This document shows positions 4,086 through 56,147 of a stretch of DNA of 64,000 nt, in pieces; within the stretch, counting starts at the first letter, position 1, and each line of letters starts with the position of its first letter. The notes beneath the pieces are model-generated. The model did no database searches and had not been told where the DNA came from. It was given only the letters and a program-made list of their open reading frames with translations. This DNA is from Octopus bimaculoides (Eukaryota). Location: the NCBI RefSeq assembly GCF_001194135.2, contig NC_068989.1:2091014-2155013 (forward strand), given 5' to 3'. The position numbers were made by a program, and so were the translations under genes.

Positions 4086-6202
4086 AACAGTTAAAGCTTT
4101 CTCTAGTACAATGAAGCATGAATCAGGTCATCGATGTCAACATAAGATAATATGGGGAGATTTGTCCCCATATTGAGGATAATTGTGAGAATCATTCTGT
4201 TCCGCTAAGAACAGAAATCATATTCTGACTCGTACACACACACGCGCACATATTTACAGATCCTCGGTCAGTTGCAATGATGAGCATTAAGTTGGTTGAT
4301 CCCTGAGCTATTCATGCATGAAATTAATATGTAAGACAATGAGTATTGCACAGACGTGTACATTTCATGTAATTCTCTTGCCAAATCAAGAGAGACTCTG
4401 TGACGGAGCTGGCTCATTAAATTACGTTAAAATAGAGTTTGAGCATGTTATTGCATTTGTGGCTTGGCTCAAATATAGATATGATTATTAATAGATGTTT
4501 TAAGCCACAGCAAAATACATGCCAGTTTTTAAATGGCTTTATTTCTATATCCAACATAATATATAACAAATTATATATATACACACATAACAAATACAGA
4601 CGGACTTTTAACAATCAAACAATGTCTGTGTATAAAATAATTTTAGCGAATAGTTGGGATGCCTGCGAGATCCTCTTCTACAAACTGTTATGATAAGCTG
4701 TTCAATAATAAAATTTATTTTAAAATGGCTGTAAGAAAATAATCATTCAAGTACTATCTGAAGTGGACAGTAACCGTCAGCCATATAATTTACTCGTGTA
4801 GTGGGTGGGAGCAATGAAAGATAGATAGATGCATAGATAGAGAGAAAGATAGATAGAGATAGAGAGAGAGAAAGAAAGAGAGAGAGAGACAGAGGGAGAG
4901 GGACAGATTGAGAGATAGAGACATGGCAAAGCAAGTAATTCGTTTTTAGAATTAGGATTTAACAGGGAAACGAATATATTTTCATAAGTTTTCTGAAAAT
5001 GAATTTGAAGAACGGCGATTCATAATTTTCTTCCCGTTTTGTGAGAGATTTAGTTTTAAAAGAATAAATTTTCTATTTATGAACGTGGTGGTTTAATGGT
5101 TTTGATGACCGTCTTGGGAAATATATCTGTGTGTCTGTGTATATACATAATATGATGATGACGACGACGACGACGATGATGATGCTGGTGGTGGTGGTGG
5201 TAGTGTTAGCGATGATGATGATGATATACACTTAGTTGATCCACAGAGGCTTGTATATCCTTTCAGTCTGTAAGTATCGACTAGTTTTGATCCTGATACC
5301 TTTTCTTTTGTGGAATGTTTTACTTCTTATCGAATTTTGGCTTTTCTGATATATAAATCCTGTATTGAGTTCCTTTCTGTACTATTTGCAAAGCCATATA
5401 CATACCCCCAGCGTATTTATGTGTTTCAGCATTTTCTGTATGCAGTATATCTCAAGTCCAGTTGTCCGTTTCTTGATTGCATTTAGTAATGAAATATCTC
5501 AATTAACTCAACTTTTCCTGCCAATGTTGTTGTACTTCGGTCGGCTGTAGAGCTCAGGCTGTACATAAACGGCCAGAGTTGAATATCAAATGAAATAATT
5601 TTGATGACCCTTGGGATATCTTGTGTTGAGTCTTTTATATATCTTTTATCTGGTATATCGAATTCACACTGATATAAAATATACATACATACATATACAT
5701 GTATATATGCATACACACACATTATGTGTTTGTATGTAATATATATTTGTATGTATGTATGTATGTATGTATGTATGTATAGATACATAAATATATATAT
5801 ATGTATATGTGTGTGTGTGTGTTTATATATATTTCTTGTTTAAGTATTAGAAACCGAACAGGCAACTCCCCACCCCACACCCAGTCACCACATTCCGGCT
5901 TCCAATCGAGATTCCTCACGTCTCACACTAAAACGTTGTAAAGTGAAGGTGGTTGTAGGGGGTTTGGACTGGATATGCATTATGAAAAACATGCAAAAAG
6001 CGCAGTGTTTGCTAATGGACAATTAACGATTTACATTCATGTGACACTGTTTAGTGATTGTGAATCCATTTCTGTTTGGTCCATTGAGAAAATCGATGAT
6101 GCCAGCTATCAAGAACCACGCGAACAATGTCGAAAGAGCTAATATTCTGATTCACACTTAACCACTATGCTAATTACGAGGAACATCCTCCAACGGCAGC
6201 TA

Positions 6203-6581: not shown

Positions 6582-7062
6582 NNNNNNNNNNNNNNNNNNN
6601 NNNNNNNNNNNNNNNNNNNNNNNNNNNNNNNNNNNNNNNNNNNNNNNNNNNNNNNNNNNNNNNNNNNNNNNNNNNNNNNNNNNNNNNNNNNNNNNNNNNN
6701 NNNNNNNNNNNNNNNNNNNNNNNNNNNNNNNNNNNNNNNNNNNNNNNNNNNNNNNNNNNNNNNNNNNNNNNNNNNNNNNNNNNNNNNNNNNNNNNNNNNN
6801 NNNNNNNNNNNNNNNNNNNNNNNNNNNNNNNNNNNNNNNNNNNNNNNNNNNNNNNNNNNNNNNNNNNNNNNNNNNNNNNNNNNNNNNNNNNNNNNNNNNN
6901 NNNNNNNNNNNNNNNNNNNNNNNNNNNNNNNNNNNNNNNNNNNNNNNNNNNNNNNNNNNNNNNNNNNNNNNNNNNNNNNNNNNNNNNNNNNNNNNNNNNN
7001 NNNNNNNNNNNNNNNNNNNNNNNNNNNNNNNNNNNNNNNNNNNNNNNNNNNNNNNNNNNNNN
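6582..7062. other. Assembly gap (N). Other gaps: 8883-9433, 10653-11077, 24687-24817, 30340-30852, 33028-33127, 33318-33583, 40881-40956, 49999-50249
   Basis: N runs; most abut microsatellites, typical of short-read assembly breaks. Confidence 1.

Positions 7063-8320: not shown

Positions 8321-8418
<98 letters not shown>
8060..8418. repeat. (TG)n/(TA)n/(CA)n compound microsatellite
   Basis: Direct reading. Confidence 0.97.
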
Positions 8419-8882: not shown

Positions 8883-9433
8883 NNNNNNNNNNNNNNNNNN
8901 NNNNNNNNNNNNNNNNNNNNNNNNNNNNNNNNNNNNNNNNNNNNNNNNNNNNNNNNNNNNNNNNNNNNNNNNNNNNNNNNNNNNNNNNNNNNNNNNNNNN
9001 NNNNNNNNNNNNNNNNNNNNNNNNNNNNNNNNNNNNNNNNNNNNNNNNNNNNNNNNNNNNNNNNNNNNNNNNNNNNNNNNNNNNNNNNNNNNNNNNNNNN
9101 NNNNNNNNNNNNNNNNNNNNNNNNNNNNNNNNNNNNNNNNNNNNNNNNNNNNNNNNNNNNNNNNNNNNNNNNNNNNNNNNNNNNNNNNNNNNNNNNNNNN
9201 NNNNNNNNNNNNNNNNNNNNNNNNNNNNNNNNNNNNNNNNNNNNNNNNNNNNNNNNNNNNNNNNNNNNNNNNNNNNNNNNNNNNNNNNNNNNNNNNNNNN
9301 NNNNNNNNNNNNNNNNNNNNNNNNNNNNNNNNNNNNNNNNNNNNNNNNNNNNNNNNNNNNNNNNNNNNNNNNNNNNNNNNNNNNNNNNNNNNNNNNNNNN
9401 NNNNNNNNNNNNNNNNNNNNNNNNNNNNNNNNN

Positions 9434-9651: not shown

Positions 9652-11077
9652 GAAAACGACGACAACAACATCATCACCGAGAGTATCCACGTAAACATGT
9701 TTCAAATAGAATATATTTGTTTATTTATATGCTTGTCCTAACATTTACTTTCAAATCTCTCGGACAAAGGTTTCTCTTCATGTAACTCATTTACATATTT
9801 TTGTACACCTCAGTGAAAGGGCTTTCTCAAGCAACAAATGCCTCATTGATAAAACGATACGGAATCCCAAGCAATGTGCACACGCATGAACACTAATTCA
9901 AAGACCAGAGTCAAAGCTACAACTAAGAAGTGGACACTGTGAAATTAGAAGTAAGCAAACCATAAATGTCAGGATTCTTTTATATCAAAGATATAATTAT
10001 TTCACAGAAATCTTAACATTCTATCGAATGGAAGATTGGCTTTTTATCAAATGTGTTATTGTATCTTATCAAATTTGCTTCAAGTTATGGGAGAATATAC
10101 GTGCACACACAGGCGCGCGCGTACTCCAACGTTTACACGCATGCATGCATGTGTTTACGTATGTATGTATATATGTATGCATGTGTATATATGTATATAT
10201 GTGTATATATAGGCATGTGTGTGCGCTTTCGTATACATATACATGGATAGATGGACAGATTGAGAGATAAATAGAAGGAATATATATGTGGATGCATATC
10301 TACAGAAGAGCCGGAAAAATTTCCCATACTGCCAAGCAAAGCGTGCGATCTCAGTCACTGGGTTATACGCATGCATATATATCTGTACATGTTTGTTGTA
10401 TGTCTAACGTTCATACACACACACATATACATACACACACGCTCACACACACACGCACACAGACGCATACACACGCACACACACGCACACACACACACAC
10501 ATCAAGAGGAATTCAAATATTCACTTTGTTGAATATATAAGCAGTAAGGTTACGACTTTTTGATCCGTGGCAAGATACGTGAATATATAATTAGGAGAAA
10601 CCATCCTCATCATTGTTTACATGAATATGTTGTGTGTGTATATATATATATANNNNNNNNNNNNNNNNNNNNNNNNNNNNNNNNNNNNNNNNNNNNNNNN
10701 NNNNNNNNNNNNNNNNNNNNNNNNNNNNNNNNNNNNNNNNNNNNNNNNNNNNNNNNNNNNNNNNNNNNNNNNNNNNNNNNNNNNNNNNNNNNNNNNNNNN
10801 NNNNNNNNNNNNNNNNNNNNNNNNNNNNNNNNNNNNNNNNNNNNNNNNNNNNNNNNNNNNNNNNNNNNNNNNNNNNNNNNNNNNNNNNNNNNNNNNNNNN
10901 NNNNNNNNNNNNNNNNNNNNNNNNNNNNNNNNNNNNNNNNNNNNNNNNNNNNNNNNNNNNNNNNNNNNNNNNNNNNNNNNNNNNNNNNNNNNNNNNNNNN
11001 NNNNNNNNNNNNNNNNNNNNNNNNNNNNNNNNNNNNNNNNNNNNNNNNNNNNNNNNNNNNNNNNNNNNNNNNNNNNN

Positions 11078-11108
<31 letters not shown>

Positions 11109-11149: not shown

Positions 11150-11330
11150 CATGTAACCACTCCAGTGCTTTTCTGGGACTTTTCCGTCTCCGGTCCCTTC
11201 CCCTCTCTCCCTTCTGACGAAGAGCCATGCTCGAAACGTAAAAAAAAACTGAGCGTCAGTTTAATATAGTTCATGTGTGAGTCTATTCGCCTTTTGCTGT
11301 CTTGTTATTTTTTATTGTCGATTTGCCTAT
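11150..11330 (+). mobile_element. Penelope-like pLTR remnant carrying a hammerhead motif
   Basis: CTGACGA(11214-11220)-A-GAGC-cat-GCTC-GAAA(11233-11236)-CGTA, in the pyrimidine-rich context typical of PLE pLTRs. Confidence 0.6.
11212..11242 (+). ncRNA. Minimal type I hammerhead ribozyme motif (PLE-type; helix I decayed)
   Basis: Core CUGACGA, 4-bp helix II, GAAA, palindromic ACGU helix III, GUA cleavage triplet (11238-11240); helix I only 2 bp (TT/AA). Confidence 0.6.
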
Positions 11331-11803
11331 ATACATATATATGTGTATATATGTATTTATTTGTATATCTATATATATGTATATATCGTGTTATTATGAG
11401 AAGAGACGTATGTTAACAGAACTACCGACAGGAGTCGAACACAAGACACTCCAAATCCTAGTTATAATATCCATGTAAAATGGAGTAAGGACTGGTTAGC
11501 TTGTAGTGGCACAGAATCGTAAAATGTATTATAAGGGACTCAAACCAAGTCGTGATATTTTGAATACATCTAATACGGTCCTATCAAATAATTGTGCTAT
11601 AGATAAAAAGGGGAATTTCATCTCTTACGCAAAATCCTCCTTAGTTAAGACATATAAAAGTATGAGAAAATTGATGGAATTCGTCCGTTATATATTTGGT
11701 CGGGGCTACTAAAAATTTAAATAAAATAAAATATCAATCGACTAAAAGAATTTTTTCTCACTCCCTTCAAAAATATGCCAAAAAGTTCATTTCATAAAAA
11801 CCA

Positions 11804-11997
11804 AGATATGTTGGAGTCCAGGGGCGTAAGAGAGCGTGAACAATTAATTATTAAAATTCCTGTTCATCCTGATGAGGGGGTCATTGCCGATATGCACCTA
11901 ACTCATAATTCGAACCGCGGCAGTGAACTCCCGAAATGGCTATAGATGTCGTTTGACTTGATTTTGTGGAACTCTCTTACGCTCCTGGACTCCAACA

Positions 11998-12002
<5 letters not shown>
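11804..12002 (+). mobile_element. ~200-bp non-autonomous element with 31-bp terminal inverted repeats enclosing a hammerhead (Penelope pLTR plus inverted tail, or MITE-like)
   Basis: 11804-11834 AGATATGTTGGAGTCCAGGGGCGTAAGAGAG is the reverse complement of 11972-12002 with 1 mismatch. Alternative boundary TA|TGTTGG...CCAACA|TA (11809-11997). Confidence 0.85.
11865..11948 (+). ncRNA. Type I hammerhead ribozyme
   Basis: Helix I CATC(11865-68)/GATG(11945-48); CUGAUGA 11869-75; 14-bp helix II 11876-89/11918-32 with one bulge and 2 G-U; GAAA 11933-36; near-palindromic helix III ATGGCTAT 11936-43; predicted cleavage after A11944 (AUA). Confidence 0.8.
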
Positions 12003-12051
<49 letters not shown>

Positions 12052-12053
<2 letters not shown>

Positions 12054-12181
12054 CCCGAGAACTACGTTAAGGGTACACGTGTCTGTGGAGTGCTCAGCCA
12101 CTTTCACGTTAATTTCACGAGCAGGCTGTTCCGTTGATCGGATCAACTGGATCCCTCGTTGTCGTAACCGACAGAGTGCCA
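12052..12181 (+). mobile_element. SINE family B, 3' part
   Basis: Near-identical to 25745-25873 (CCCCGAGAACTACGTTAAGGGTACAC...GATCGGATCAACT...GAGTGCCA). Confidence 0.92.
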
Positions 12182-12769
12182 TGATAACGTGTATAAAGAT
12201 TTTAAACCATTATTTAATGAATCAACAATGTTGAACAAGAAAAATCAAGAAGATTTCCCGGGTGAACATTTTATACTTTATGTGTACTTTTAATTTGCTT
12301 ATTTTTATTCTCCTTTTTTGCACCAATTCTAATGAGTATCCGTATAAATAAAAGTTCTAAATAGTTTAGGTATCATACCTAAGGGAAGTGGGTCTTTTTT
12401 TTTTTGATTATATATTGAATGAAAGAAGCGCACGTGAAAGGTTTTTCAAATAATCGCTTCACGAAACGACAAAATCGATGGAATTCAGGAAGAAAAGCTA
12501 CGGAAAGAGAAAGGAAGACAAAAAAAGAATAAAGTTCAAGAGAAATTACGTCTGTGAGAATTGCAAATTTGCGAGACAGGAAACAGAAATTATGGCAAGA
12601 AAATGAATATAAACGCTAAGCCAAGGGAAGAGACGAGATTTTAAGAAACATATATATGAAATGATGTAATGTATCACAAAGAGAATTCTGGGAAGGAGAA
12701 GAAAAGAAAGAGAAAGAGTTGTGCAAAGAGGAAATCTTTCACAAAAAGCAATAAAAGAAAGACAAGGAC

Positions 12770-21658: not shown

Positions 21659-21830
21659 GGCACGACGTCGGTTACACCGACAAGCGTTCCAGTTGATCCG
21701 AACAATGGAACAGCCAGCTCGTGAAATTAACGTGCAAGTGGCTGAGCATTCGACAAATTTAAGATAGTTTCGCAGGGAGATTCAGTTCGACACCATGTGA
21801 CAAAGCTGGTCCTTTGAATTACAGGTACAA
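21659..21830 (-). mobile_element. SINE family B, 3' half
   Basis: Reverse complement of the TTCAAAGGGCC...GTTAATTTCACGAGC...ATCAACTGGAAC...GTGCC module. Confidence 0.88.
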
Positions 21831-22679: not shown

Positions 22680-22813
22680 TTTACTTGTTTCAGTCGTTTG
22701 ACTGCGGCCATGCTGGAGCACCGTCTGGAAGAATTTTTAGCCGAATGACTCGATCCCAGTACTTATTAAGACCTGGTATTTATTCTATCAGAAACTTTTG
22801 CCGAACCGCTAAG
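22680..22813 (-). mobile_element. SINE family A 3' fragment
   Basis: TTTCAGTC.TTTGACTGCGGCCATGCTGGAGCACCG matches 19585-19622. Confidence 0.88.
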
Positions 22814-22815
22814 AA

Positions 22816-22968
22816 ATGAGAAAATTCCAGGAAAAGTGGACAAATGATTATTTATTTATTGAAGTAAAAAATAATGCAATGCGTTTGATATGTTTGGAAT
22901 CTGTCTCCACTTTTAAAGAATTGAATATTAAGCACTACACTTCAAAACATGAGAATTATACAAGAGTT
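22816..22968 (+). mobile_element. hAT (SPIN/Charlie/GTF2IRD2-like) transposase N-terminal zinc-finger remnant
   Basis: RKFQEKWTNDYLFIEVKNNAMRLICLESVSTFKELNIKHYTSKH matches the F..EW...YFF.E....P.CLIC.E.V...KEYN.KRHY..KH motif; first Cys lost and ORF truncated. Confidence 0.88.
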
Positions 22969-23654
22969 TGGTATCATGATGTGAGTTTTATTGCCAGCTA
23001 TTTTACTGATAGGTCAATCGTTCCTTTATTGCGTCCACTGAACACTATGTGCCGAGCAAGAAACTTAATCCAACAATAAGTTTATATTATTGGAAGATAA
23101 AGTTTTAATGATTGGTACCTTTTGATTCCCATGAAAATTAGTCGGAACACGAAAGATAATTCCCTGCAGTAACACTTGTAGTATTGTAATCAATTCTTAC
23201 CACGTTTATAATTCTTAATTAGATTGATATTGTATCCAGAGGACAAAGATCTGATATCCACTGCATTTGATAGCAATGGCAGTACATAAATTTATTTTTA
23301 ACATGGAAATGTGCAAAAAATATTGGAAAATTATTTTCGTTTGAGTTTATTTCTAATCAGTTTTGGCTCCACTTAGTTTCCTTTCGCTCTGCACAACTGC
23401 AGTGATTCTTTCGTCATGGATCCAGTTTCCTTTGGTAATGTTAAAAGTTGGCTGCTGCTGTCGCAGATTGGAACTGATTAAGCAGATCTTAATCTGGTCA
23501 ACAGATCTGGTCACAGCCTGCAGATCTGTTGCTCCAGATATATCATATCTTTGTCAAGGTAAGTACGATATTCAGATAAACAGCTGTTACTCGGATGGAG
23601 TTCAGTACGACAGTCTTGATATGCTTTACTCTATCCACTGCCCTCTCTAGAACT

Positions 23655-23830
23655 CCGTCGCTTTCGACGACCATGGTTCTAGTTCACCCGATCCATGGAA
23701 CATCCTGCAAGTAGCTGAGCACTCCACAGACACTCGTGCTCTTAACGTAGTTCTCAGAGAGATTCAGCGTGACCACTCAGGTACTGGGGTCAATGCAATC
23801 GACTTGTTCTCCTCACCTCAAAATTTGAAG
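23655..23830. mobile_element. Chimeric SINE debris: family B 3' part (minus) joined to a family C 3' module (plus)
   Basis: GCTGAGCACTCCACAGACAC..CTTAACGTAGTTCTC..GATTCAGCGTGAC followed by GTACTGGGGTCAATGCAATCGACT. Confidence 0.75.
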
Positions 23831-24686: not shown

Positions 24687-25492
24687 NNNNNNNNNNNNNN
24701 NNNNNNNNNNNNNNNNNNNNNNNNNNNNNNNNNNNNNNNNNNNNNNNNNNNNNNNNNNNNNNNNNNNNNNNNNNNNNNNNNNNNNNNNNNNNNNNNNNNN
24801 NNNNNNNNNNNNNNNNNTATATATATATTCACATACATACACATACATACCTACATACATACATACATACCTTCTGTCTTGCAAAGCTCGTTATATCAAT
24901 AAAAATAAAAACACGCACTGGTTCAGTATCACTTCTTTATTGTTAGTCAATCTTGTAATCTTGTAAGCAAAATACAAAAACAAAAATACACACACACATT
25001 TGTGTAATGTGTTTGTGTGTATATATATATGAACGTATAGATATAAACACCTACTACATGTGCATATGCACACGCATGCGTGTGTGTGTATATATGTTTA
25101 TTGAGAGGTAGAGAAAGATAGATAGATAAATACATGTATGCATACATACATATGTGCGTACATACATACTTGCATACATACACGCATACATATATACATA
25201 CATACATGCATGCAGACATACATATATACATGTATGCATACATACACACATGCAGACATACATACATAAATTACATACATAAATTACATACATAAATTAC
25301 ATACATAGATGCCTACAGCTGCACAAAGCGATGGGAGAGCTGTGTCACCATTGGCGGTGGCCATGTAGAAAAGGACTAATAACTATGCCAAGTTTCGTTT
25401 ATCCCAGTCCTTGGGAAGTGGGTCAGGGGAAATCGTTAATGAAAGCCCTTCGTACATACATGCATAGATTACATATATACATAAATACACGT

Positions 25493-25873
25493 GGAGGCGC
25501 GATGGCCCAGTGGTTAGGGCAGCGGACTCGCGGTCGTACGATCGCGGTTTCGATTCCCAGACCGGTCTTTGTGAGTATTTATTGAGCGGAAACACCTAAA
25601 GCTCCGCGAGTCTCCGGCAGGAGTTTAGTTGCGAACCCTGCTGTATTTTGTCATCACAACTTCCTCTCACTCTTTTATCCTGTTTCTGTTGTACCCGTAT
25701 TTCAAAGGGCCAACCTTGTCACACGCTGTGTCACGCTGAATCTCCCCAAGAACTACGTTAAGGGTACACGTGTCTGTGGAGTACTCAGCCACTTGCCCCG
25801 TTAATTTCACGAGCAGGCTGTTCCGTTGATCGGATCAACTAGAACCCTCGTCATTGTAACCGACGGAGTGCCA
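25493..25873 (+). mobile_element. SINE family B, full length (tRNA-derived)
   Basis: Pol III A box TGGCCCAGTGG (25503-25513), B box GGTTTCGATTCCC (25546-25558), body, and 3' tail ending GAGTGCCA; several partial copies in the window. Confidence 0.95.
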
Positions 25874-26959
25874 CGACTACATAAATACATACATGCATAC
25901 ATACATACAAACAGAGAGACAGATATATGCATATATTGAATGTGCGCATTAAAACTTATAGACAGATAATAATGTGTACTTTTCCTTTATTTTTGTTAAT
26001 TGTTTTGTCCGGTGAAAAGGGCAGTGATCAAGACATCCGTTTGTTGTTTGTACACCCGTCTTCGTCTTTCGCCTTTTTTCTGTAAATTCCAACTATATAT
26101 ATATAAGATTGGCAGGCATGACGATCGATTTCCAGTTAAAGCTTGCTGCAGGGGCATCTCGGGGCGGTTTGTGAGGAAAATACTGACAGTTTTGAGAGTA
26201 TCATGAAGAGAAAGGAAAACAGCAAATGAGAAAACCCTTCACTGCAGGTTTGGGAGGCAACGGAAAGAGCCCCTTGCTCGCTTTTTACAAAGCCTTTGTT
26301 TCTTTAGCCGCATTCTCCCAGCCATAAACTGAATCATTTATAGCTACCTTCCTAATAACACATCCACTCCACTTCTGGTAACCCTTTCTATATTTCAACA
26401 TTGATTTATTCCCTGTCCCTTTCCTCAAATATGTCACCCACTCCAATTAAAAGTATCCAATGTCGCTCTTTAGCATTTTTACCATCCTTGATCATACGTC
26501 AATTTCAAACAGTTTTCTTTCCTCTTAATTCAAAAGATCGATATTTCAGAAAAGTTGCCATACCAATCCACAGTTTCAGTATGTACTTTTCGGTGAAACT
26601 TCGAGATCACTATCAATAAAATCGCAAGATAGTACATCGGCTTGAATATAAACGACAGTACTCTTTCCTCAAATCGAGGCCTTGTTGTACATAAACTTTG
26701 TTCTTGTGGGGGCGTTTAATTCGATGTCAAAATAATCCTGCGACTACAGAGCATAGTTCTGTATTAGCGCTACACCTTGACTTCGCCGTCCTGGTAGTGA
26801 CACTTACTTAATGTCTGCTTATGACATCTGTTAATTCCCTTTAGATTTCTATTCAATTAAAACTTCACCTAAACAGAGTTTCTTTTTAGTTTTCTATCAG
26901 AATTTTAATACGTAGAAGACTTTACGAAAATTTGTCAGACGTCTAAACCAAATGTTACA

Positions 26960-30283: not shown

Positions 30284-31794
30284 AGGCATATAGGTCAGGT
30301 TTCTCTGCGAGATATGTCAGTCGAAGTATATCCTAATGTNNNNNNNNNNNNNNNNNNNNNNNNNNNNNNNNNNNNNNNNNNNNNNNNNNNNNNNNNNNNN
30401 NNNNNNNNNNNNNNNNNNNNNNNNNNNNNNNNNNNNNNNNNNNNNNNNNNNNNNNNNNNNNNNNNNNNNNNNNNNNNNNNNNNNNNNNNNNNNNNNNNNN
30501 NNNNNNNNNNNNNNNNNNNNNNNNNNNNNNNNNNNNNNNNNNNNNNNNNNNNNNNNNNNNNNNNNNNNNNNNNNNNNNNNNNNNNNNNNNNNNNNNNNNN
30601 NNNNNNNNNNNNNNNNNNNNNNNNNNNNNNNNNNNNNNNNNNNNNNNNNNNNNNNNNNNNNNNNNNNNNNNNNNNNNNNNNNNNNNNNNNNNNNNNNNNN
30701 NNNNNNNNNNNNNNNNNNNNNNNNNNNNNNNNNNNNNNNNNNNNNNNNNNNNNNNNNNNNNNNNNNNNNNNNNNNNNNNNNNNNNNNNNNNNNNNNNNNN
30801 NNNNNNNNNNNNNNNNNNNNNNNNNNNNNNNNNNNNNNNNNNNNNNNNNNNNTATATATATATAAAGTAAAATAGAAAATAACAAAGATAATTTCGTTAT
30901 TTGTCACAGTGGTGCGGTATATATTACAAGGAGGAAACGGAAAAGTAAAAACCGATTCTACAGTTTAATGGGAAACATTTAACGGAAAATAAAACAAACA
31001 ATCAGAACTCCAGTAGACAAAACCAACATTTCGAATGTAATTTTCTCTTGAAATTCGTCATTGTCTGACACGTCCAAAATAGCTGCTACTTTATTGATTT
31101 TGTGATTAAAACTGCTGGTGAGATGCTGTGTTATTTCTAGACGTATTTGTTTCATTAGGGCAGGATAATGAAATCGGTATAAAGAACCCTGTGGAACTCT
31201 ACACATTAAAACCTATGCTTATGTTCATCACGTTTCTCATTTCCAATTCAACATGGCGTGCTTGTTTGTTCGTCGTTTGTTTGCTTTATTTCATTATTTT
31301 CCTTTTCTTTGCTTAAATCCAATCTGGGTCGATGAAAGAGTTAGTAATGTATTCGTTGGGTTAACTTCAACACTTTGCTGATTTTGTAATGTATATAATT
31401 CCAGTGAGAATTAAATGTATTTTTATAGCATCTCTTTAGTTTTTATATACATTTCTTGCCTTTTGCCTCTCTTGTTCACCAGGATTGATATTTTTGTAGC
31501 ACATCTTTCATTTCACGTCTTTATAACATGTTTTTTTTTTATTTGACTCTGGTCCAGGTTTTTGTAAGGCAAATAATTCACTTCACTGAATATATTCTGG
31601 TGCTTCACTGGGATTATTTTTGTTATTCTTCGCATAACATCTGCTAGTCTTTAGCTTTAATCTTTTACCTGATTCATTCATTGGACTTCGACCTTTCGAG
31701 GGCAACGCCTTGGAGGACTTACGAGAACAAATCGTGTATGTGTGTGTATGTATGTGTATATTTGTGTGTATGTATGTGGGTGTGTGTGTTTCAG

Positions 31795-32134: not shown

Positions 32135-32465
32135 CATTCCTGTGAAGGAGTGTTGCCAAGTGGTTACAGTATCTGGCTCGCGATCGTATGGCTGTGAGTT
32201 CGATTCCTAATAGTGCGTCGTCTCCTTGAACAAGACACTTTATTTCACGTTGCTCCAATCCACTCAGCTGGCAAAAATGAGTTGTACCTGTAATTCAAAG
32301 GGCAAGGTTTGTCACATTCTGTGTCCCACTGAAGCTCCCTGAGAACTACGTGAAGGGAACGCGAGTCTGTGGAATACTCAGCCATTTGCATGTTAATTTC
32401 AGAAGCGGGTTGTTCGGTTGATCGGATCAACTGGAACGTTCCCCGTCGTCACCGACGGGATGCCA
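32135..32465 (+). mobile_element. SINE sharing the family B 3' tail but with a different tRNA head and a CORE-like centre
   Basis: Head TGCCAAGTGG..GAGTTCGATTCC, centre CCTTGAACAAGACACTTTATTTCACGTTGCTCC, then the family B tail (TTCAAAGGGC..GAGAACTACG..GATCGGATCAACTGGAAC..GCCA). Confidence 0.9.
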
Positions 32466-33027: not shown

Positions 33028-33584
33028 NNNNNNNNNNNNNNNNNNNNNNNNNNNNNNNNNNNNNNNNNNNNNNNNNNNNNNNNNNNNNNNNNNNNNNNNN
33101 NNNNNNNNNNNNNNNNNNNNNNNNNNNATATGTATGTATGTATGTATGTATGTATGTGTGTATGTGTGTGTGTGTATTATGTATGCATGTATGTATGTAT
33201 GTATATTATGATCTACCTATTTATCTATCTCTCTATGTATCTAACTTTCTCACTCTATAGATATATATTTGTCATTGTATGTACATGTGTACGTGTGTGT
33301 GAATTTATGTTTGTGTGNNNNNNNNNNNNNNNNNNNNNNNNNNNNNNNNNNNNNNNNNNNNNNNNNNNNNNNNNNNNNNNNNNNNNNNNNNNNNNNNNNN
33401 NNNNNNNNNNNNNNNNNNNNNNNNNNNNNNNNNNNNNNNNNNNNNNNNNNNNNNNNNNNNNNNNNNNNNNNNNNNNNNNNNNNNNNNNNNNNNNNNNNNN
33501 NNNNNNNNNNNNNNNNNNNNNNNNNNNNNNNNNNNNNNNNNNNNNNNNNNNNNNNNNNNNNNNNNNNNNNNNNNNNNNNNNNNT

Positions 33585-40847: not shown

Positions 40848-41799
40848 GCGTCTATATATTTATATACACACATATGTATANNNNNNNNNNNNNNNNNNNN
40901 NNNNNNNNNNNNNNNNNNNNNNNNNNNNNNNNNNNNNNNNNNNNNNNNNNNNNNNNATATATATATATATATATATATATATACTTATATGTATGTATGT
41001 AATAAAATTTAGAAATTGCACCGAGGGACGAAAAGAATCCATAGAACCGCTACTTGTGTCCGGTTCCTATTGCATAAAGTGAGAAACAGACGTCTATACG
41101 GTTTTAATTTCGTTTGAGGAGAGTTGTTAAATTTACTTGCATCGCTGAAATGAATGGGGACATCGCTTTCAATTTGACTCAAGAAATACATACATATTCA
41201 GTCCGCTTAATTGAATATCCTCAGTAATCAAAATATTTATGCAATTAAACGAAATACACAAGCAAAATGCATAGTGAACGATGAATTATGAAATTTCAAT
41301 ATACTGTGCGCAGTATGGTATTGTTCCTCTCTTACATACATATGAGTTGTGCAGTAAAAAAATAAAGAAGCAAAACGGTTTTCTTTTGTTCCAGTGAATT
41401 TTCTGTTATTTATATTTGAAAAACACCGAAGAAGGCATTAATACAATTGCATTTATTCAATGCATTGGATAATAATTACAGATCGATGTTTACATCCCAA
41501 CGGTATATTTAATCGGTACACAACAATTTGCTGAAGAAGAAACTAATAAATTATCTCTTACGTTTTTCTTGAGACATAATGTTGTTAAAATGTCCGGGTT
41601 TGTACAAATTTAACATTGTAAATATAATTATGGTATCCAGTTGAGAAATTCTGTTATCTTTGACTCTATGATCTCAAGCTGTTACTGATTCACACGTCTT
41701 CAATGACACAAAAGTTAGCCAAATATTCACTGTGATACTTTTCTAAGTAACCTCAAACATAGTGAATCTAACCTCTGTTGTTGAGAGAGGTAATTCTAC

Positions 41800-42400
41800 A
41801 GCCTCGCCATCATTGCTGTGATTGTACGAGTAATTTGTTGATCTTGCATCCTTATTCAGGAAATAGGCAATCAATTCTTTGTCACTGTTTAAGATCTTTG
41901 CCTATGATCTTTAGTCCCATTCTCTTCTTCCATCATAGAAGCAGGGAGTTAGCACAATTTTACCTTCCTCACCAGGGGCGCATCTACAGCTGCAAAAACA
42001 ACCGTCTGAAAGCAATTAATGGTCATAGGATCTGTAAGATTGTTGAATGTTGATTTTATTAGTAAATGAATAGCATCCAGTAATGTATTTCTTTGTCAAT
42101 ATTATTTGCTTCTAGCTCTGGATAACCATCAATGGTTAATGGCCACGGTACCTCTGTACAGTGATGTTTCAAAGTTTTTCATGTTTTGGTCACATGTCTG
42201 AAATATTGGTGTTGCATTTGGTGAAAGAAACATCACTTTCACTTGTAACTGCTGGTTGAGTAACGCAGCTGTAAACAAGCAGCTTTTCTCTTTCTCCATA
42301 CCGTCTTTTTGTGAAATCCTTCTCAGCCTTGTGATAAGTATATCTTCAGTTATTCTTGCTGTCGTTATATCGACAGTGAATTCCCTTGCAGACATCTAAA
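41800..42400 (-). mobile_element. pogo/Tigger (DDE_1) transposase remnant
   Basis: VKVMFLSPNATPIFQTCDQNMKNFETSLYR and NTLLDAIHLL match IKV.FLPPNTTS..QP.DQG.I..FK..YR and NILDAI. Confidence 0.85.
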
Positions 42401-49251: not shown

Positions 49252-49480
<229 letters not shown>

Positions 49481-49811
49481 AGCCTTTTTGCTTTATTGGG
49501 GTTCTCGATGTTTGTGGTCTTCCGGAACGCTTCTCGTGTATATTCTGGACGATTCCAGCAGCTTTAAACTTATCTCCAATTCCACTGACGGTAAGCTGCG
49601 TCGGCGGATCTGTTTGAAACTCCATCCTAAACTGTCTTTGCACTTCAACTGCGTTTTCACTCTTCCAGTAGCAATTTAGAATGAATTCCCTTTGTTCAAA
49701 TTTTAGTCTAACTGCCCTCATTAATTCCAGTGGGTTTCATTAGGAAAGAAAGACCATCAGTTGAGTTATCAGCTGCTAAATTGTGTAAACATTTTTTGGG
49801 GACACCCTGTA
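49481..49811 (-). mobile_element. Mariner-like element 5' fragment (TIR plus DUF4817-type HTH transposase N-terminus)
   Basis: TIR TA|CAGGGTGTCCCCAAAAAATGTTTACACA (plus 49782-49811); ORF 49434-49721 RLKFEQREFILNCYWKSENAVEVQRQFRMEFQTDPPTQLTV..I.DKF.A.G.VQN.H..RSGRP. Confidence 0.92.
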
Positions 49812-49998: not shown

Positions 49999-50249
49999 NN
50001 NNNNNNNNNNNNNNNNNNNNNNNNNNNNNNNNNNNNNNNNNNNNNNNNNNNNNNNNNNNNNNNNNNNNNNNNNNNNNNNNNNNNNNNNNNNNNNNNNNNN
50101 NNNNNNNNNNNNNNNNNNNNNNNNNNNNNNNNNNNNNNNNNNNNNNNNNNNNNNNNNNNNNNNNNNNNNNNNNNNNNNNNNNNNNNNNNNNNNNNNNNNN
50201 NNNNNNNNNNNNNNNNNNNNNNNNNNNNNNNNNNNNNNNNNNNNNNNNN

Positions 50250-55519: not shown

Positions 55520-56147
55520 AAAGAAATAAAAACCAACAGTATGGTTGAAGCCATAGGTATTCATAACAAAAAAGGAATACTGGTGGAATGTCTCAATGAA
55601 GACCTCAATAAAATGTAATCACAACAGACTTAATATAATGATTTGGGATAGAGAAGAGAAACCGTGCACAGTTGTGGAAATTAGCTGCTCAGCGGATGTT
55701 AACGTAAAGCTGAAGATCAGTGAAAAAGAGGACATCTACGTTGAACTATTGAGAAGTCTGCAGTTACTCTATCCAGATTATAAGTTTAGCTTTATACCTG
55801 TAATTATTGGGGCCCTGGGATATGTAACACACTCCCTAAATACCAGTCTTGCGAAATTATGCTTCTCAAAACCAGAAAGGAGAAAGCTGATTTGAAGACT
55901 ACAAATCCAAACCATCACTGGAACTGTAAAGATCTGTAATGCTTTCCAAAAGTTTATCATTTAAGTATATATGAGCATTTCTAGATATGTAACTATATGC
56001 ATGAGAATACATACATAAAACATACAAATCTGTACATATACATACGTACAAAAATTCCCTGCTGCTGATTTTGAAATTCCAATGAACCTTGGATCCAGGT
56101 TAGAAATCAACTCTTTCTCTTTTGACAAGAACTATTGAAATAAAAGT
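55520..56147 (+). mobile_element. RLE-type (R4/NeSL-like) LINE 3' end: endonuclease domain plus 3' UTR
   Basis: KCNHNRLNIMIWDREEKPCTVVEISCSADVNVKLKISEKEDIYVELLRSLQLLYPDYKFSFIPVIIGALGY matches the RLE motif HNRPD.....VE.SCP.D...K..EK..Y..L....PV.IGALG; catalytic PD lost. Confidence 0.92.

What the first reader, a model, noticed from the sequence alone, without database searches (positions are those of the whole stretch)
11804..12002. Hammerhead ribozyme packaged inside a ~200-bp element with 31-bp terminal inverted repeats
Seen in sequence: 31-bp terminal inverted repeats with a single mismatch that would be a G-U pair in RNA. They enclose every conserved hammerhead nucleotide in type I order: helix I CATC/GATG, CUGAUGA, a 14-bp helix II with a 28-nt loop, GAAA, a near-palindromic helix III ATGGCTAT and an AUA cleavage triplet ending at 11944. 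Core and helices are intact although neighbouring TEs are heavily decayed. Established: Penelope-like elements (PLEs) carry minimal type I hammerheads with very short palindromic helix III, proposed to cleave as dimers, and their pLTRs can bear a ~30-40 nt inverted tail; retrozymes are non-autonomous hammerhead retroelements. Inference: this is a solo pLTR plus tail, or a non-autonomous hammerhead-carrying mobile family. Its transcript would fold into a rod closed by a 31-bp dsRNA stem, which is also a potential ADAR substrate. The ends can also be read as TA|TGTTGG...CCAACA|TA, a MITE-like architecture, which would be an unusual ribozyme/DNA-transposon hybrid. The long helix II insert is atypical for minimal PLE hammerheads.
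Basis: partly seen in the sequence, partly recalled or inferred. Interest (0 to 1): 0.9.

Follow-up and report, generated by a model that had tools for sequence, protein, structure and literature searches.

The report
Truncated Penelope-type retroelement with hammerhead ribozyme
This 199-bp piece of an octopus genome does carry an intact-looking hammerhead ribozyme between 31-bp inverted ends, but it is most likely an ordinary truncated insertion of a Penelope-like retroelement (or a non-autonomous derivative of one), not a new ribozyme/DNA-transposon hybrid.

Summary
The 31-nt arms pair 30/31, with one G·U. Between them lies a complete type I hammerhead: 4-bp helix I, CUGAUGA, 14-bp helix II with a 28-nt loop, GAAA, near-palindromic helix III, and cleavage after A11944. 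A descriptor finds it once in the window against about 0.03 per shuffled window.

The window is octopod DNA, and octopus genomes hold many Penelope-like elements (PLEs). Genuine PLE loci fetched as controls show the same anatomy. A min-hammerhead lies 53-62 nt upstream of the insertion's 3' end (58 nt here). An inverted 5'-truncated copy abuts the main copy. One control is an ORF-less 632-bp twin insertion.

The best reading is a 168-bp 5'-truncated copy plus a 31-bp inverted twin, made when the PLE enzyme primes reverse transcription on both nicked strands at a (TATC)n microsatellite. The helix III is the dimer-dependent type, so a solo copy is probably inactive.

Caveats: no other copy and no octopus PLE 3' end could be retrieved, so homology is untested. 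A model built from Poseidon-type PLE hammerheads does not score this variant. No unambiguous target-site duplication exists. The MITE reading rests only on a palindromic TA/ATAT. Verdict: a new member of a known kind, of low to moderate interest.

The parts
11804..11834 (-). Left arm: a 31-nt inverted, extremely 5'-truncated twin copy, the reverse complement of the element's last 31 nt
   Evidence: 30/31 complementary; single G/A difference at 11823. Interpretation by analogy with the inverted 5'-truncated copies in genuine PLE loci: L003, L004, L005 (76 nt) and L006 (167 nt) and PMC8557442.
11835..12002 (+). Main copy: 168 nt, the 5'-truncated 3' terminal segment of a hammerhead-bearing retroelement RNA
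   Evidence: It contains the hammerhead on the sense strand, with the cleavage site 58 nt from the 3' end. Genuine PLE insertions show 53, 55, 56 and 60-62 nt.
11865..11948 (+). Type I hammerhead motif: helix I 11865-68/11945-48; core CUGAUGA 11869-75; helix II 11876-89/11918-32 with 28-nt loop 11890-11917; GAAA 11933-36; helix III 11936-43; cleavage after A11944
   Evidence: Helix II appears in the MFE fold of both the element and the isolated domain.
11936..11943 (+). Helix III AUGGCUAU: as a monomer, 2 bp plus a GGCU tetraloop; between two copies, 8 bp with two G·U (dimer type)
   Evidence: Adding the 2-bp hairpin destabilises the monomer fold (-18.4 vs -21.1 kcal/mol). The self-duplex is worth -8.7 kcal/mol.
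11972..12002 (+). Right arm: the 3' terminal 31 nt of the main copy, the presumed start region of reverse transcription
   Evidence: The ends of both arms coincide to the last base, as expected if both strands were primed at the same RT start site (PMC11167929). A flush example is L004.
11998..12053 (.). (TATC)14 microsatellite abutting, and overlapping by 5 nt, the right end; the probable insertion target
   Evidence: PLE insertion bias toward microsatellites and AT-rich DNA is reported in PMC8557442 and PMC11167929.

Best explanation
The 199 bp are one insertion made by Penelope-like-element (PLE) machinery in an octopod genome.

Inferred mechanism: a PLE ribonucleoprotein (reverse transcriptase plus GIY-YIG endonuclease) nicked both DNA strands at the edge of a (TATC)n tract. 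Each nick primed reverse transcription at the same internal start site of the template RNA, about 55-60 nt downstream of its hammerhead. One cDNA ran 168 nt (11835-12002, + strand, carrying the hammerhead). The other stopped after 31 nt (11804-11834, inverted). The two were joined head-to-head, so both outer ends are the element's 3' end and look like terminal inverted repeats.

The template was either a full PLE, truncated at insertion, or a short non-autonomous PLE derivative (a 'non-LTR retrozyme' monomer). These cannot be separated here.

The hammerhead is a passenger from the template's 3' region. Its helix III is stable only between two copies, so this solo copy is probably catalytically silent. 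The 31-bp stem is a by-product of integration, not a designed part.

Shown: the anatomy, the spacing, the analogues in real PLE loci, and the octopod origin. Inferred: the twin-priming event, the template identity and the lack of activity.
For: (1) The hammerhead is real and of the PLE type: all core positions, 4-bp helix I, enlarged helix II, G10.1-C11.1, palindromic helix III (criteria in PMC4209133).

(2) Spacing from cleavage site to the insertion's 3' end is 58 nt. In genuine PLEs fetched here it is 56 nt (Sitophilus L003), 53 nt (Tenebrio L004), 55 nt (Uloborus L005) and 60-62 nt (Dendrolimus L006). In Anolis PAc it is 85-92 nt including the 30-40-nt tail (PMC11167929).

(3) Inverted 5'-truncated copies abut the main copy in L003 (574 bp), L004 (1031 bp, flush ends), L005 (76 nt or more) and L006. 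L006 also holds an ORF-less 632-bp twin insertion (167-bp inverted copy, 463-bp main copy, 11-bp TSD), a direct larger analogue. PMC8557442 describes this as a general PLE feature.

(4) PAc protein nicks and extends both strands with the same RT start (PMC11167929).

(5) The target is a microsatellite in AT-rich DNA, matching the reported PLE bias.

(6) The host is an octopod. O. vulgaris has 31 PLE families with 336 recently active insertions (PMC13282606).

(7) A second, Poseidon-type PLE min-hammerhead lies 650 bp upstream at 11211-11243. An independent covariance model finds it at 17.8 bits, E about 0.01. So PLE fragments do populate this locus.

(8) Most PLE hammerheads in animal genomes are solo copies from truncated elements (PMC4209133).
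Against: - No homology to any PLE 3' end has been shown. No other copy and no octopus PLE could be retrieved.
- There is no RT or GIY-YIG remnant in the window.
- A covariance model built from four genuine Poseidon-type PLE hammerheads recovers held-out PLE hammerheads but not this one, even with filters off. This hammerhead lacks the bulged base after A9, its helix II is far longer, and its helix III differs.
- The 58-nt 3' segment is T-rich, not A/C-rich like the arthropod controls.
- There is no target-site duplication at the 31-nt boundaries, whereas L003 and L006 have 10-11-bp TSDs; L004 shows none either.
- There is no 30-40-nt tail on either side.
Confidence: 0.6

Rival explanations
1. 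A distinct non-autonomous family whose unit is the whole ~200-bp hairpin-closed element, both arms included. It would be copied as such (a retrozyme-like or 'MITE-shaped' retroelement), with the 31-bp stem as a functional part, for example for RNA stability or recognition.
For: The arms are nearly perfect (30/31) and flush. The transcript folds into a very stable rod (-91 kcal/mol, z = -10). Non-LTR retrozymes are reported to derive from PLE pLTRs and to occur partly as monomers (bioRxiv 10.64898/2026.07.22.740005).
Against: A single copy in 64 kb plus 20 kb of O. vulgaris. Known animal retrozymes are head-to-tail tandem repeats, not inverted-repeat units (PMC7229834). Twin insertion explains near-perfect, flush arms without invoking function (L004).
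Confidence: 0.15
2. A DNA-transposon MITE (Tc1/mariner-like, TA target duplication, 26-bp TIRs TGTTGG...CCAACA) that happens to carry, or has captured, a hammerhead.
For: TIR-like ends. TA (or ATAT) can be read on both sides. Tc1/mariner elements and MITEs are abundant in octopus (PMC13282606).
Against: The TA/ATAT is palindromic and lies inside the complementary arms. Complementarity continues 3 nt beyond the TA (AGA/TCT), which a TSD does not predict. No transposase-related sequence and no second copy were found. The 58-nt hammerhead-to-end spacing would be a coincidence. No hammerhead-bearing MITE turned up in the papers searched.
Confidence: 0.07
3. A local fold-back or inverted duplication produced by replication or repair next to the microsatellite, unrelated to the insertion mechanism, acting on a pre-existing solo hammerhead fragment.
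For: The element abuts a (TATC)14 tract, and microsatellite-rich DNA is prone to rearrangement.
Against: The duplicated 31 nt are exactly the terminal 31 nt and end flush with the other end, as in PLE twin insertions. No other local rearrangement is seen.
Confidence: 0.08
4. The hammerhead is a chance match inside an unrelated palindromic repeat.
For: Rfam and the Poseidon-type model do not score it. Helix I is only 4 bp.
Against: Shuffles give about 0.003-0.03 descriptor matches per window, and the real helix II (14 bp) is far stronger than the descriptor requires. G10.1-C11.1 and a palindromic helix III, which the descriptor does not require, are both present. Rfam also misses true PLE hammerheads.
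Confidence: 0.03

Closest known systems
Solo or 5'-truncated Penelope-like element insertions with an inverted 5'-truncated twin copy (Evgen'ev and Arkhipova; Craig et al. 2021, PMC8557442)
   Same: Both outer ends are the element's 3' end. The hammerhead is on the sense strand 53-62 nt from that end. Truncation is strong and the target is a microsatellite or AT-rich DNA. There is a direct analogue in Dendrolimus L006 9845-10476.
   Different: Here the inverted copy is only 31 nt and the whole unit 199 bp. There is no tail and no clear TSD. Homology to a PLE of the same genome has not been shown.
Minimal type I hammerheads of PLEs (Cervera and de la Pena 2014, PMC4209133)
   Same: Short open helix I (4 bp), helix II longer than canonical, G10.1-C11.1, palindromic helix III that needs a second copy, and mostly solo genomic copies.
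   Different: No unpaired base between A9 and G10.1. Helix II is 14 bp with a 28-nt loop instead of 6-8 bp with a short loop. Helix III is AUGGCUAU rather than ACGU. It is not scored by a model of Poseidon-type PLE hammerheads.
Animal non-LTR retrozymes (PMC7229834; bioRxiv 10.64898/2026.07.22.740005)
   Same: Short non-coding unit with one type I hammerhead. Helix III of 2 bp plus a tetraloop, as in invertebrate retrozyme hammerheads. Thought to be PLE-derived and PLE-mobilised.
   Different: Retrozymes are head-to-tail tandem arrays that yield circular RNAs. This is a single unit with inverted, not direct, terminal repeats.
MITEs of the Tc1/mariner (Stowaway-like) type
   Same: About 200 bp, terminal inverted repeats, and a possible TA at both ends.
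   Different: The TA cannot be told apart from the arms. No family and no transposase link were found. Carrying a ribozyme at PLE-typical spacing is unexplained by this model.

Membership tests
Hammerhead ribozyme, type I | Conserved core C3 U4 G5 A6 N7 G8 A9 / G12 A13 A14 / A15.1-U16.1 / H17 (not G) | tested here: met
   CUGAUGA 11869-75, GAAA 11933-36, U11943, A11944.
Hammerhead ribozyme, type I | Three helices in type I order, with helix II closed by G10.1-C11.1 | tested here: met
   Helix I 4 bp, helix II 14 bp, helix III 2 bp as a monomer or 8 bp as a dimer.
Hammerhead ribozyme, type I | Match to Rfam hammerhead covariance models | tested here: not met
   No hit at gathering score or at E<=10. 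Control: genuine PLE hammerheads in L002 and L003 are missed as well, so this feature does not discriminate for this subclass.
Hammerhead ribozyme, type I | Site-specific self-cleavage | not testable with these tools
   Needs in vitro transcription of monomer and dimer constructs.
PLE minimal hammerhead (PMC4209133) | Short helix I (4-5 bp or less) and palindromic helix III that requires dimerisation | tested here: met
   Helix I is 4 bp. The AUGGCUAU self-duplex is -8.7 kcal/mol, and the monomer helix III is destabilising.
PLE minimal hammerhead (PMC4209133) | Unpaired nucleotide between A9 and G10.1 | tested here: not met
   CUGAUGA is followed directly by G10.1. All five control PLE hammerheads have the extra base.
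PLE minimal hammerhead (PMC4209133) | Helix II of about 6-8 bp with a short loop; match to a model built from genuine PLE hammerheads | tested here: not met
   Helix II is 14 bp with a 28-nt loop. Model R1 finds held-out L002 (26.8 bits), four L006 copies, and window 11211-11243 (17.8 bits), but not 11865-11948, even with filters off.
Penelope-like element insertion | Hammerhead on the sense strand a fixed short distance upstream of the insertion's 3' end | tested here: met
   58 nt here; 53, 55, 56 and 60-62 nt in L004, L005, L003 and L006.
Penelope-like element insertion | Inverted 5'-truncated copy abutting the 5' end, so that both outer ends are 3' ends | tested here: met
   The 31-nt arm 11804-11834 is the reverse complement of the terminal 31 nt. 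The same layout is seen in L003-L006.
Penelope-like element insertion | RT plus GIY-YIG ORF in the element | tested here: not met
   tblastn with the Poseidon_Ac protein finds nothing in the window, and there are no motifs. This is expected for a 168-bp truncated copy, so it does not exclude PLE origin.
Penelope-like element insertion | Optional 30-40-nt tail on one end | tested here: not met
   The arms end flush. The tail is optional (PMC8557442), and L004 is also flush.
Penelope-like element insertion | Target-site duplication | tested here: inconclusive
   None at the 31-nt boundaries; only palindromic AT/TA/ATAT inside the arms. L003 and L006 have 10-11-bp TSDs; L004 has none visible.
Penelope-like element insertion | Sequence homology to the 3' end or pLTR of a PLE in the same genome | not testable with these tools
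   No eukaryotic genome search is available. The PLE protein search listed no octopus hits among the best 120 of 4621.
Animal non-LTR retrozyme | Head-to-tail tandem repeats of the hammerhead unit | tested here: not met
   Single copy, no direct repeat of the unit.
MITE (TA-duplicating) | TIRs flanked by a direct TA duplication, and many copies of uniform size | tested here: inconclusive
   TIRs are present. The TA is palindromic and lies inside the arms. Copy number could not be tested beyond 84 kb of octopod DNA, which holds one copy.

The most novel reading that the evidence does not exclude
The element is the founder or a member of an undescribed cephalopod family of short hammerhead-bearing retroelements. 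In this reading the unit includes the 31-bp closing stem and an unusually long helix II, so it would be a hairpin-closed, retrozyme-like RNA. In an animal with massive A-to-I editing, its perfect dsRNA stem could be an ADAR target or a regulator of ribozyme folding.
Probability: 0.1. Interest if true: 0.6.

Novelty: new member of a known kind. Interest (0 to 1): 0.25.

Why it matters
If the main reading is right, this is one more relic of Penelope-like retrotransposition. Its value is mostly practical. It shows that very short twin-primed PLE insertions can mimic MITEs, and MITE finders would call them as such. It also shows that PLE-type hammerheads escape Rfam, so they go unannotated in cephalopod genomes. 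The variant hammerhead (14-bp helix II with a 28-nt loop, no bulge after A9) extends the known range of PLE-associated ribozymes. It would only become important if it defined an active non-autonomous family or cleaved efficiently.

Tried and rejected
- **Rfam** at gathering and permissive thresholds: no hammerhead. Shown to be uninformative by controls.
- **Other copies in the window or in 20 kb of O. vulgaris:** none.
- **Translating the open frame across the element** and searching 5.8 billion predicted proteins for spurious ORFs on other copies: nothing.
- **Exact-pattern scans:** metagenome contigs with the TIR and with the hammerhead pattern, viral contigs and prokaryotic genomes all gave nothing. 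None of these collections holds cephalopod genomes.
- **PLE coding remnants in the window:** motif grep and tblastn with Poseidon_Ac found none.
- **Six-frame Pfam scan:** the tool refuses translations containing stops, so I dropped it in favour of tblastn.
- **Retrieving octopus PLEs through Poseidon_Ac homologues:** 4621 hits, but the 120 listed are reptile, insect and metagenome sequences. I used them as positive controls instead.
- **Supplements of PMC8557442 and PMC13282606:** no TE libraries held.
- **Correction:** the long list of repeat lines printed after L005 belongs to L006. The 'L005 outer end' lines used those wrong coordinates and are disregarded. redid both loci separately.
- **Chance origin of the hammerhead:** rejected.
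- **The 11211 hammerhead as a dimer partner:** rejected, because the helix III sequences differ (ACGU vs AUGGCUAU).

Full report
**1.
The window carries a 31-nt inverted repeat, 11804-11834 against 11972-12002. It is 30/31 complementary with 137 nt between the arms. The one mismatch is G11823 opposite T11983, which is a G·U in + strand RNA.

Between the arms, on the + strand, every element of a type I hammerhead is present in the right order:
- helix I: CATC 11865-68 / GATG 11945-48
- core: CUGAUGA 11869-75
- helix II: 11876-89 / 11918-32, 14 pairs (12 Watson-Crick, 2 G·U, one bulged A) closing a 28-nt loop, starting with G10.1-C11.1
- GAAA 11933-36
- helix III: AUGGCUAU 11936-43
- cleavage triplet ending at A11944

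A simple descriptor (helix I at least 4 bp, CUGAUGA, helix II at least 4 bp, GAAA, U-H, helix I) matches once in the real window. In 300 dinucleotide-preserving shuffles it matches 0.027 times per window, or 0.003 with helix II of at least 6 bp. The real helix II is much stronger than the descriptor requires. The motif is not a chance match.

**2. Rfam is silent, and that means nothing here.**
No hammerhead family is reported at gathering score for the window or at E<=10 for 11700-12100. As a control I fetched genuine Penelope-like element (PLE) loci. Their hammerheads sit just downstream of the RT-EN ORF, and Rfam misses them at E<=10 too. PLE-type minimal hammerheads in general escape the Rfam models.

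**3. Folding.**
The whole element folds into a rod closed by the 31-bp stem (-91.1 kcal/mol, z = -10.2). Helix II forms in the MFE of both the element and the isolated domain. The hammerhead-competent monomer fold (helices I and II) is 3.7 kcal/mol above the MFE. Adding the 2-bp helix III hairpin makes it worse (-18.4 against -21.1). Two copies can form an 8-bp helix III worth -8.7 kcal/mol. This is the dimer-dependent design described for animal type I and PLE hammerheads (PMC4209133). A solo copy is therefore expected to be nearly inactive.

**4. Context.**
- The window is AT-rich (34% GC), full of microsatellites and assembly gaps, and has no long ORFs.
- A TE protein remnant at 55557-55892 has its only named relative in Octopus vulgaris. 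The O. vulgaris chromosome segment around that gene (L001) shares many interspersed repeats with the window at 70-85% identity. The window is octopod DNA.
- The element is single-copy in the window and absent from L001.
- Its right end runs into (TATC)14 (11998-12053). A 5'-truncated copy of a SINE-like repeat follows, which has four other copies in the window.
- There is no RT or GIY-YIG remnant anywhere in the window.
- Octopus genomes are rich in PLEs. O. vulgaris has 31 PLE families with 336 recently active insertions (PMC13282606), and Penelope is among the abundant shared cephalopod families (PMC8967140).

**5. What the literature says PLE insertions look like.**
- Insertions are strongly 5'-truncated.
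- An inverted 5'-truncated copy often lies immediately upstream, giving inverted repeats around the unit.
- A 30-40-nt tail is often present on one end.
- Hammerheads sit near the 3' end.
- Insertion is biased toward microsatellites, which obscures target duplications (PMC8557442).
- Most PLE hammerheads in animal genomes are solo copies of truncated elements, and pairs on opposite strands 100-700 bp apart occur (PMC4209133).
- The purified Anolis PLE protein nicks and extends both DNA strands. It starts reverse transcription at the same internal site on both, at +111-118 where the hammerhead cuts at +26 (PMC11167929).

**6. Positive controls examined here.**
I used the Poseidon_Ac protein (supplement of PMC11167929) to find PLE proteins and fetched their loci.

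| Locus | Species | Layout | Cleavage site to 3' end |
|---|---|---|---|
| L003 | Sitophilus oryzae | 10-bp TSD, inverted 5'-truncated copy (574 bp, with a 30-nt tail), 10-nt filler, full copy, TSD | 56 nt (86 with tail) |
| L004 | Tenebrio molitor | 1031-bp inverted copy flush with the main copy's 3' end, no obvious TSD | 53 nt from the hammerhead-like site |
| L005 | Uloborus diversus | 76-nt inverted arm next to the ORF start | 55 nt |
| L006 | Dendrolimus kikuchii | full twin copy, plus a separate ORF-less twin insertion at 9845-10476: 167-bp inverted copy with 34-nt tail, 2 nt, 463-bp main copy, 11-bp TSD with one mismatch | 60-62 nt |
| Finding | octopod | 31-nt inverted copy, 168-nt main copy | 58 nt |

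The finding has the same layout on a smaller scale.

**7. Membership tests that fail.**
I built a covariance model from four genuine Poseidon-type PLE hammerheads. It recovers a held-out one in L002 (26.8 bits) and four in L006. In the window it finds a different site, 11211-11243 (17.8 bits, E about 0.01 over 110 kb). It does not score 11865-11948 even with filters off.

The finding's hammerhead differs in three ways. It lacks the bulged base after A9. Its helix II is about twice as long, with a 28-nt loop. Its helix III (2 bp plus a tetraloop) is closer to invertebrate retrozyme hammerheads (PMC7229834) and to the 'less atypical' PLE hammerheads of flies, rotifers, shrimps and mosquitoes (PMC4209133).

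Further differences: its 3' segment is T-rich rather than A/C-rich. There is no tail. No target duplication is seen at the 31-nt boundaries; only palindromic AT/TA/ATAT inside the arms can be read that way.

So it is not a member of the Poseidon-type hammerhead subfamily. PLE origin rests on architecture, spacing, target and host, not on sequence homology.

**8. Interpretation.**
The best-supported reading (about 0.6) is one insertion event by PLE machinery. Both nicked strands primed reverse transcription at the same start site of an RNA carrying the hammerhead about 58 nt upstream. One cDNA reached 168 nt and the other 31 nt, and they were joined head-to-head.

Whether the template was an autonomous PLE or a non-autonomous PLE derivative cannot be decided without other copies. 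The preprint 10.64898/2026.07.22.740005 argues that animal retrozymes are such derivatives.

The rivals are:
- a fixed hairpin-closed non-autonomous family (0.15)
- a local fold-back duplication (0.08)
- a TA-duplicating MITE (0.07)
- a chance match (0.03)

The MITE reading has no support beyond a palindromic dinucleotide. The complementarity also continues three bases past it.

**9. What could not be done.**
No tool here searches eukaryotic genomes. All indirect routes to other copies failed. Copy number, covariation among copies, the empty site and homology to an octopus PLE therefore remain open. A single BLASTN against octopod assemblies would settle them.

**10. Verdict.**
The tail and MITE readings need correction. 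The element is best filed as an ordinary, fairly young, truncated PLE-type insertion carrying a variant hammerhead. It is a new member of a known kind, with interest about 0.25.

Noticed in passing
window 11211-11243 (+), island 11139-~11327: A second, Poseidon-type PLE min-hammerhead: CTGACGA-A-GAGC cat GCTC-GAAACGT-A. It lies in a ~190-bp island of unique sequence embedded in TA-rich microsatellite, on the same strand 650 bp upstream of the finding. A covariance model built from unrelated genuine PLE hammerheads finds it (17.8 bits, E about 0.01). The cleavage site is ~87 nt from the island's right edge, which matches the with-tail distance of PLEs. Helix I is only about 2 bp, and an assembly gap (10653-11077) lies close by.
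   Followed up: partly
window 12052-12184; also 25743-25876, 32336-32465, 21659-21755 (-), 23652-23755 (-): A SINE-like interspersed repeat family, 71-91% identical between copies. The copy next to the finding is 5'-truncated exactly at the end of the (TATC)14 tract.
   Followed up: partly
L006 2943-2982 (-), 7215-7254 (+), 9936-9975 (-), 10378-10417 (+): The Dendrolimus kikuchii PLE hammerheads have the core GUGAUCA instead of CUGAUGA. This is a natural C3-G8 to G3-C8 swap, the same double change that partly rescues activity in the Anolis PLE mutants (PMC11167929). My CUGANGA descriptor missed them; the covariance model found them.
   Followed up: no
L003 5773 vs 8341-8343: In the Sitophilus oryzae PLE, the 5' end of the full-length main copy coincides, within 2 nt, with the hammerhead cleavage site of the unit. 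This would be expected if a ribozyme-processed RNA 5' end was the template end.
   Followed up: no
L003 5189-5218 (rc) and L005 ~4900-4919 (rc): The 'tail' sequences of a beetle PLE and a spider PLE share the motif GGCCG(C/T)GAAAGCCT. Their 3' segments also share GAC.ACGGC..AA...CCCGGAA-like motifs. This suggests a conserved RT-initiation structure across arthropod Poseidon-type PLEs, which the octopod element lacks.
   Followed up: no
protein P0065: A PLE reverse transcriptase fragment, 62% identical to the Anolis Poseidon, is deposited as a hypothetical protein of Escherichia coli on a 2.6-kb contig. This is almost certainly eukaryotic contamination of a bacterial assembly.
   Followed up: no
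window 55557-55892 (+), 49437-49736 (-), 42132-42395 (-), 22813-23076 (+): Decayed TE protein remnants. One is a retroelement C-terminal domain with an O. vulgaris homologue (54% identity). By eye, the others look like a transposase helix-turn-helix fragment, a pogo/Tigger-like DDE fragment and a hAT-like fragment. Only the first was searched.
   Followed up: partly
window 6582-7062, 8883-9433, 10653-11077, 24687-24817, 30340-30852, 33028-33127, 33318-33583, 40881-40956, 49999-50249: Nine assembly gaps (N runs, 2794 N in total), mostly next to microsatellites. The long 'inverted repeats' reported around 10625-11103 are artefacts of an N run.
   Followed up: yes
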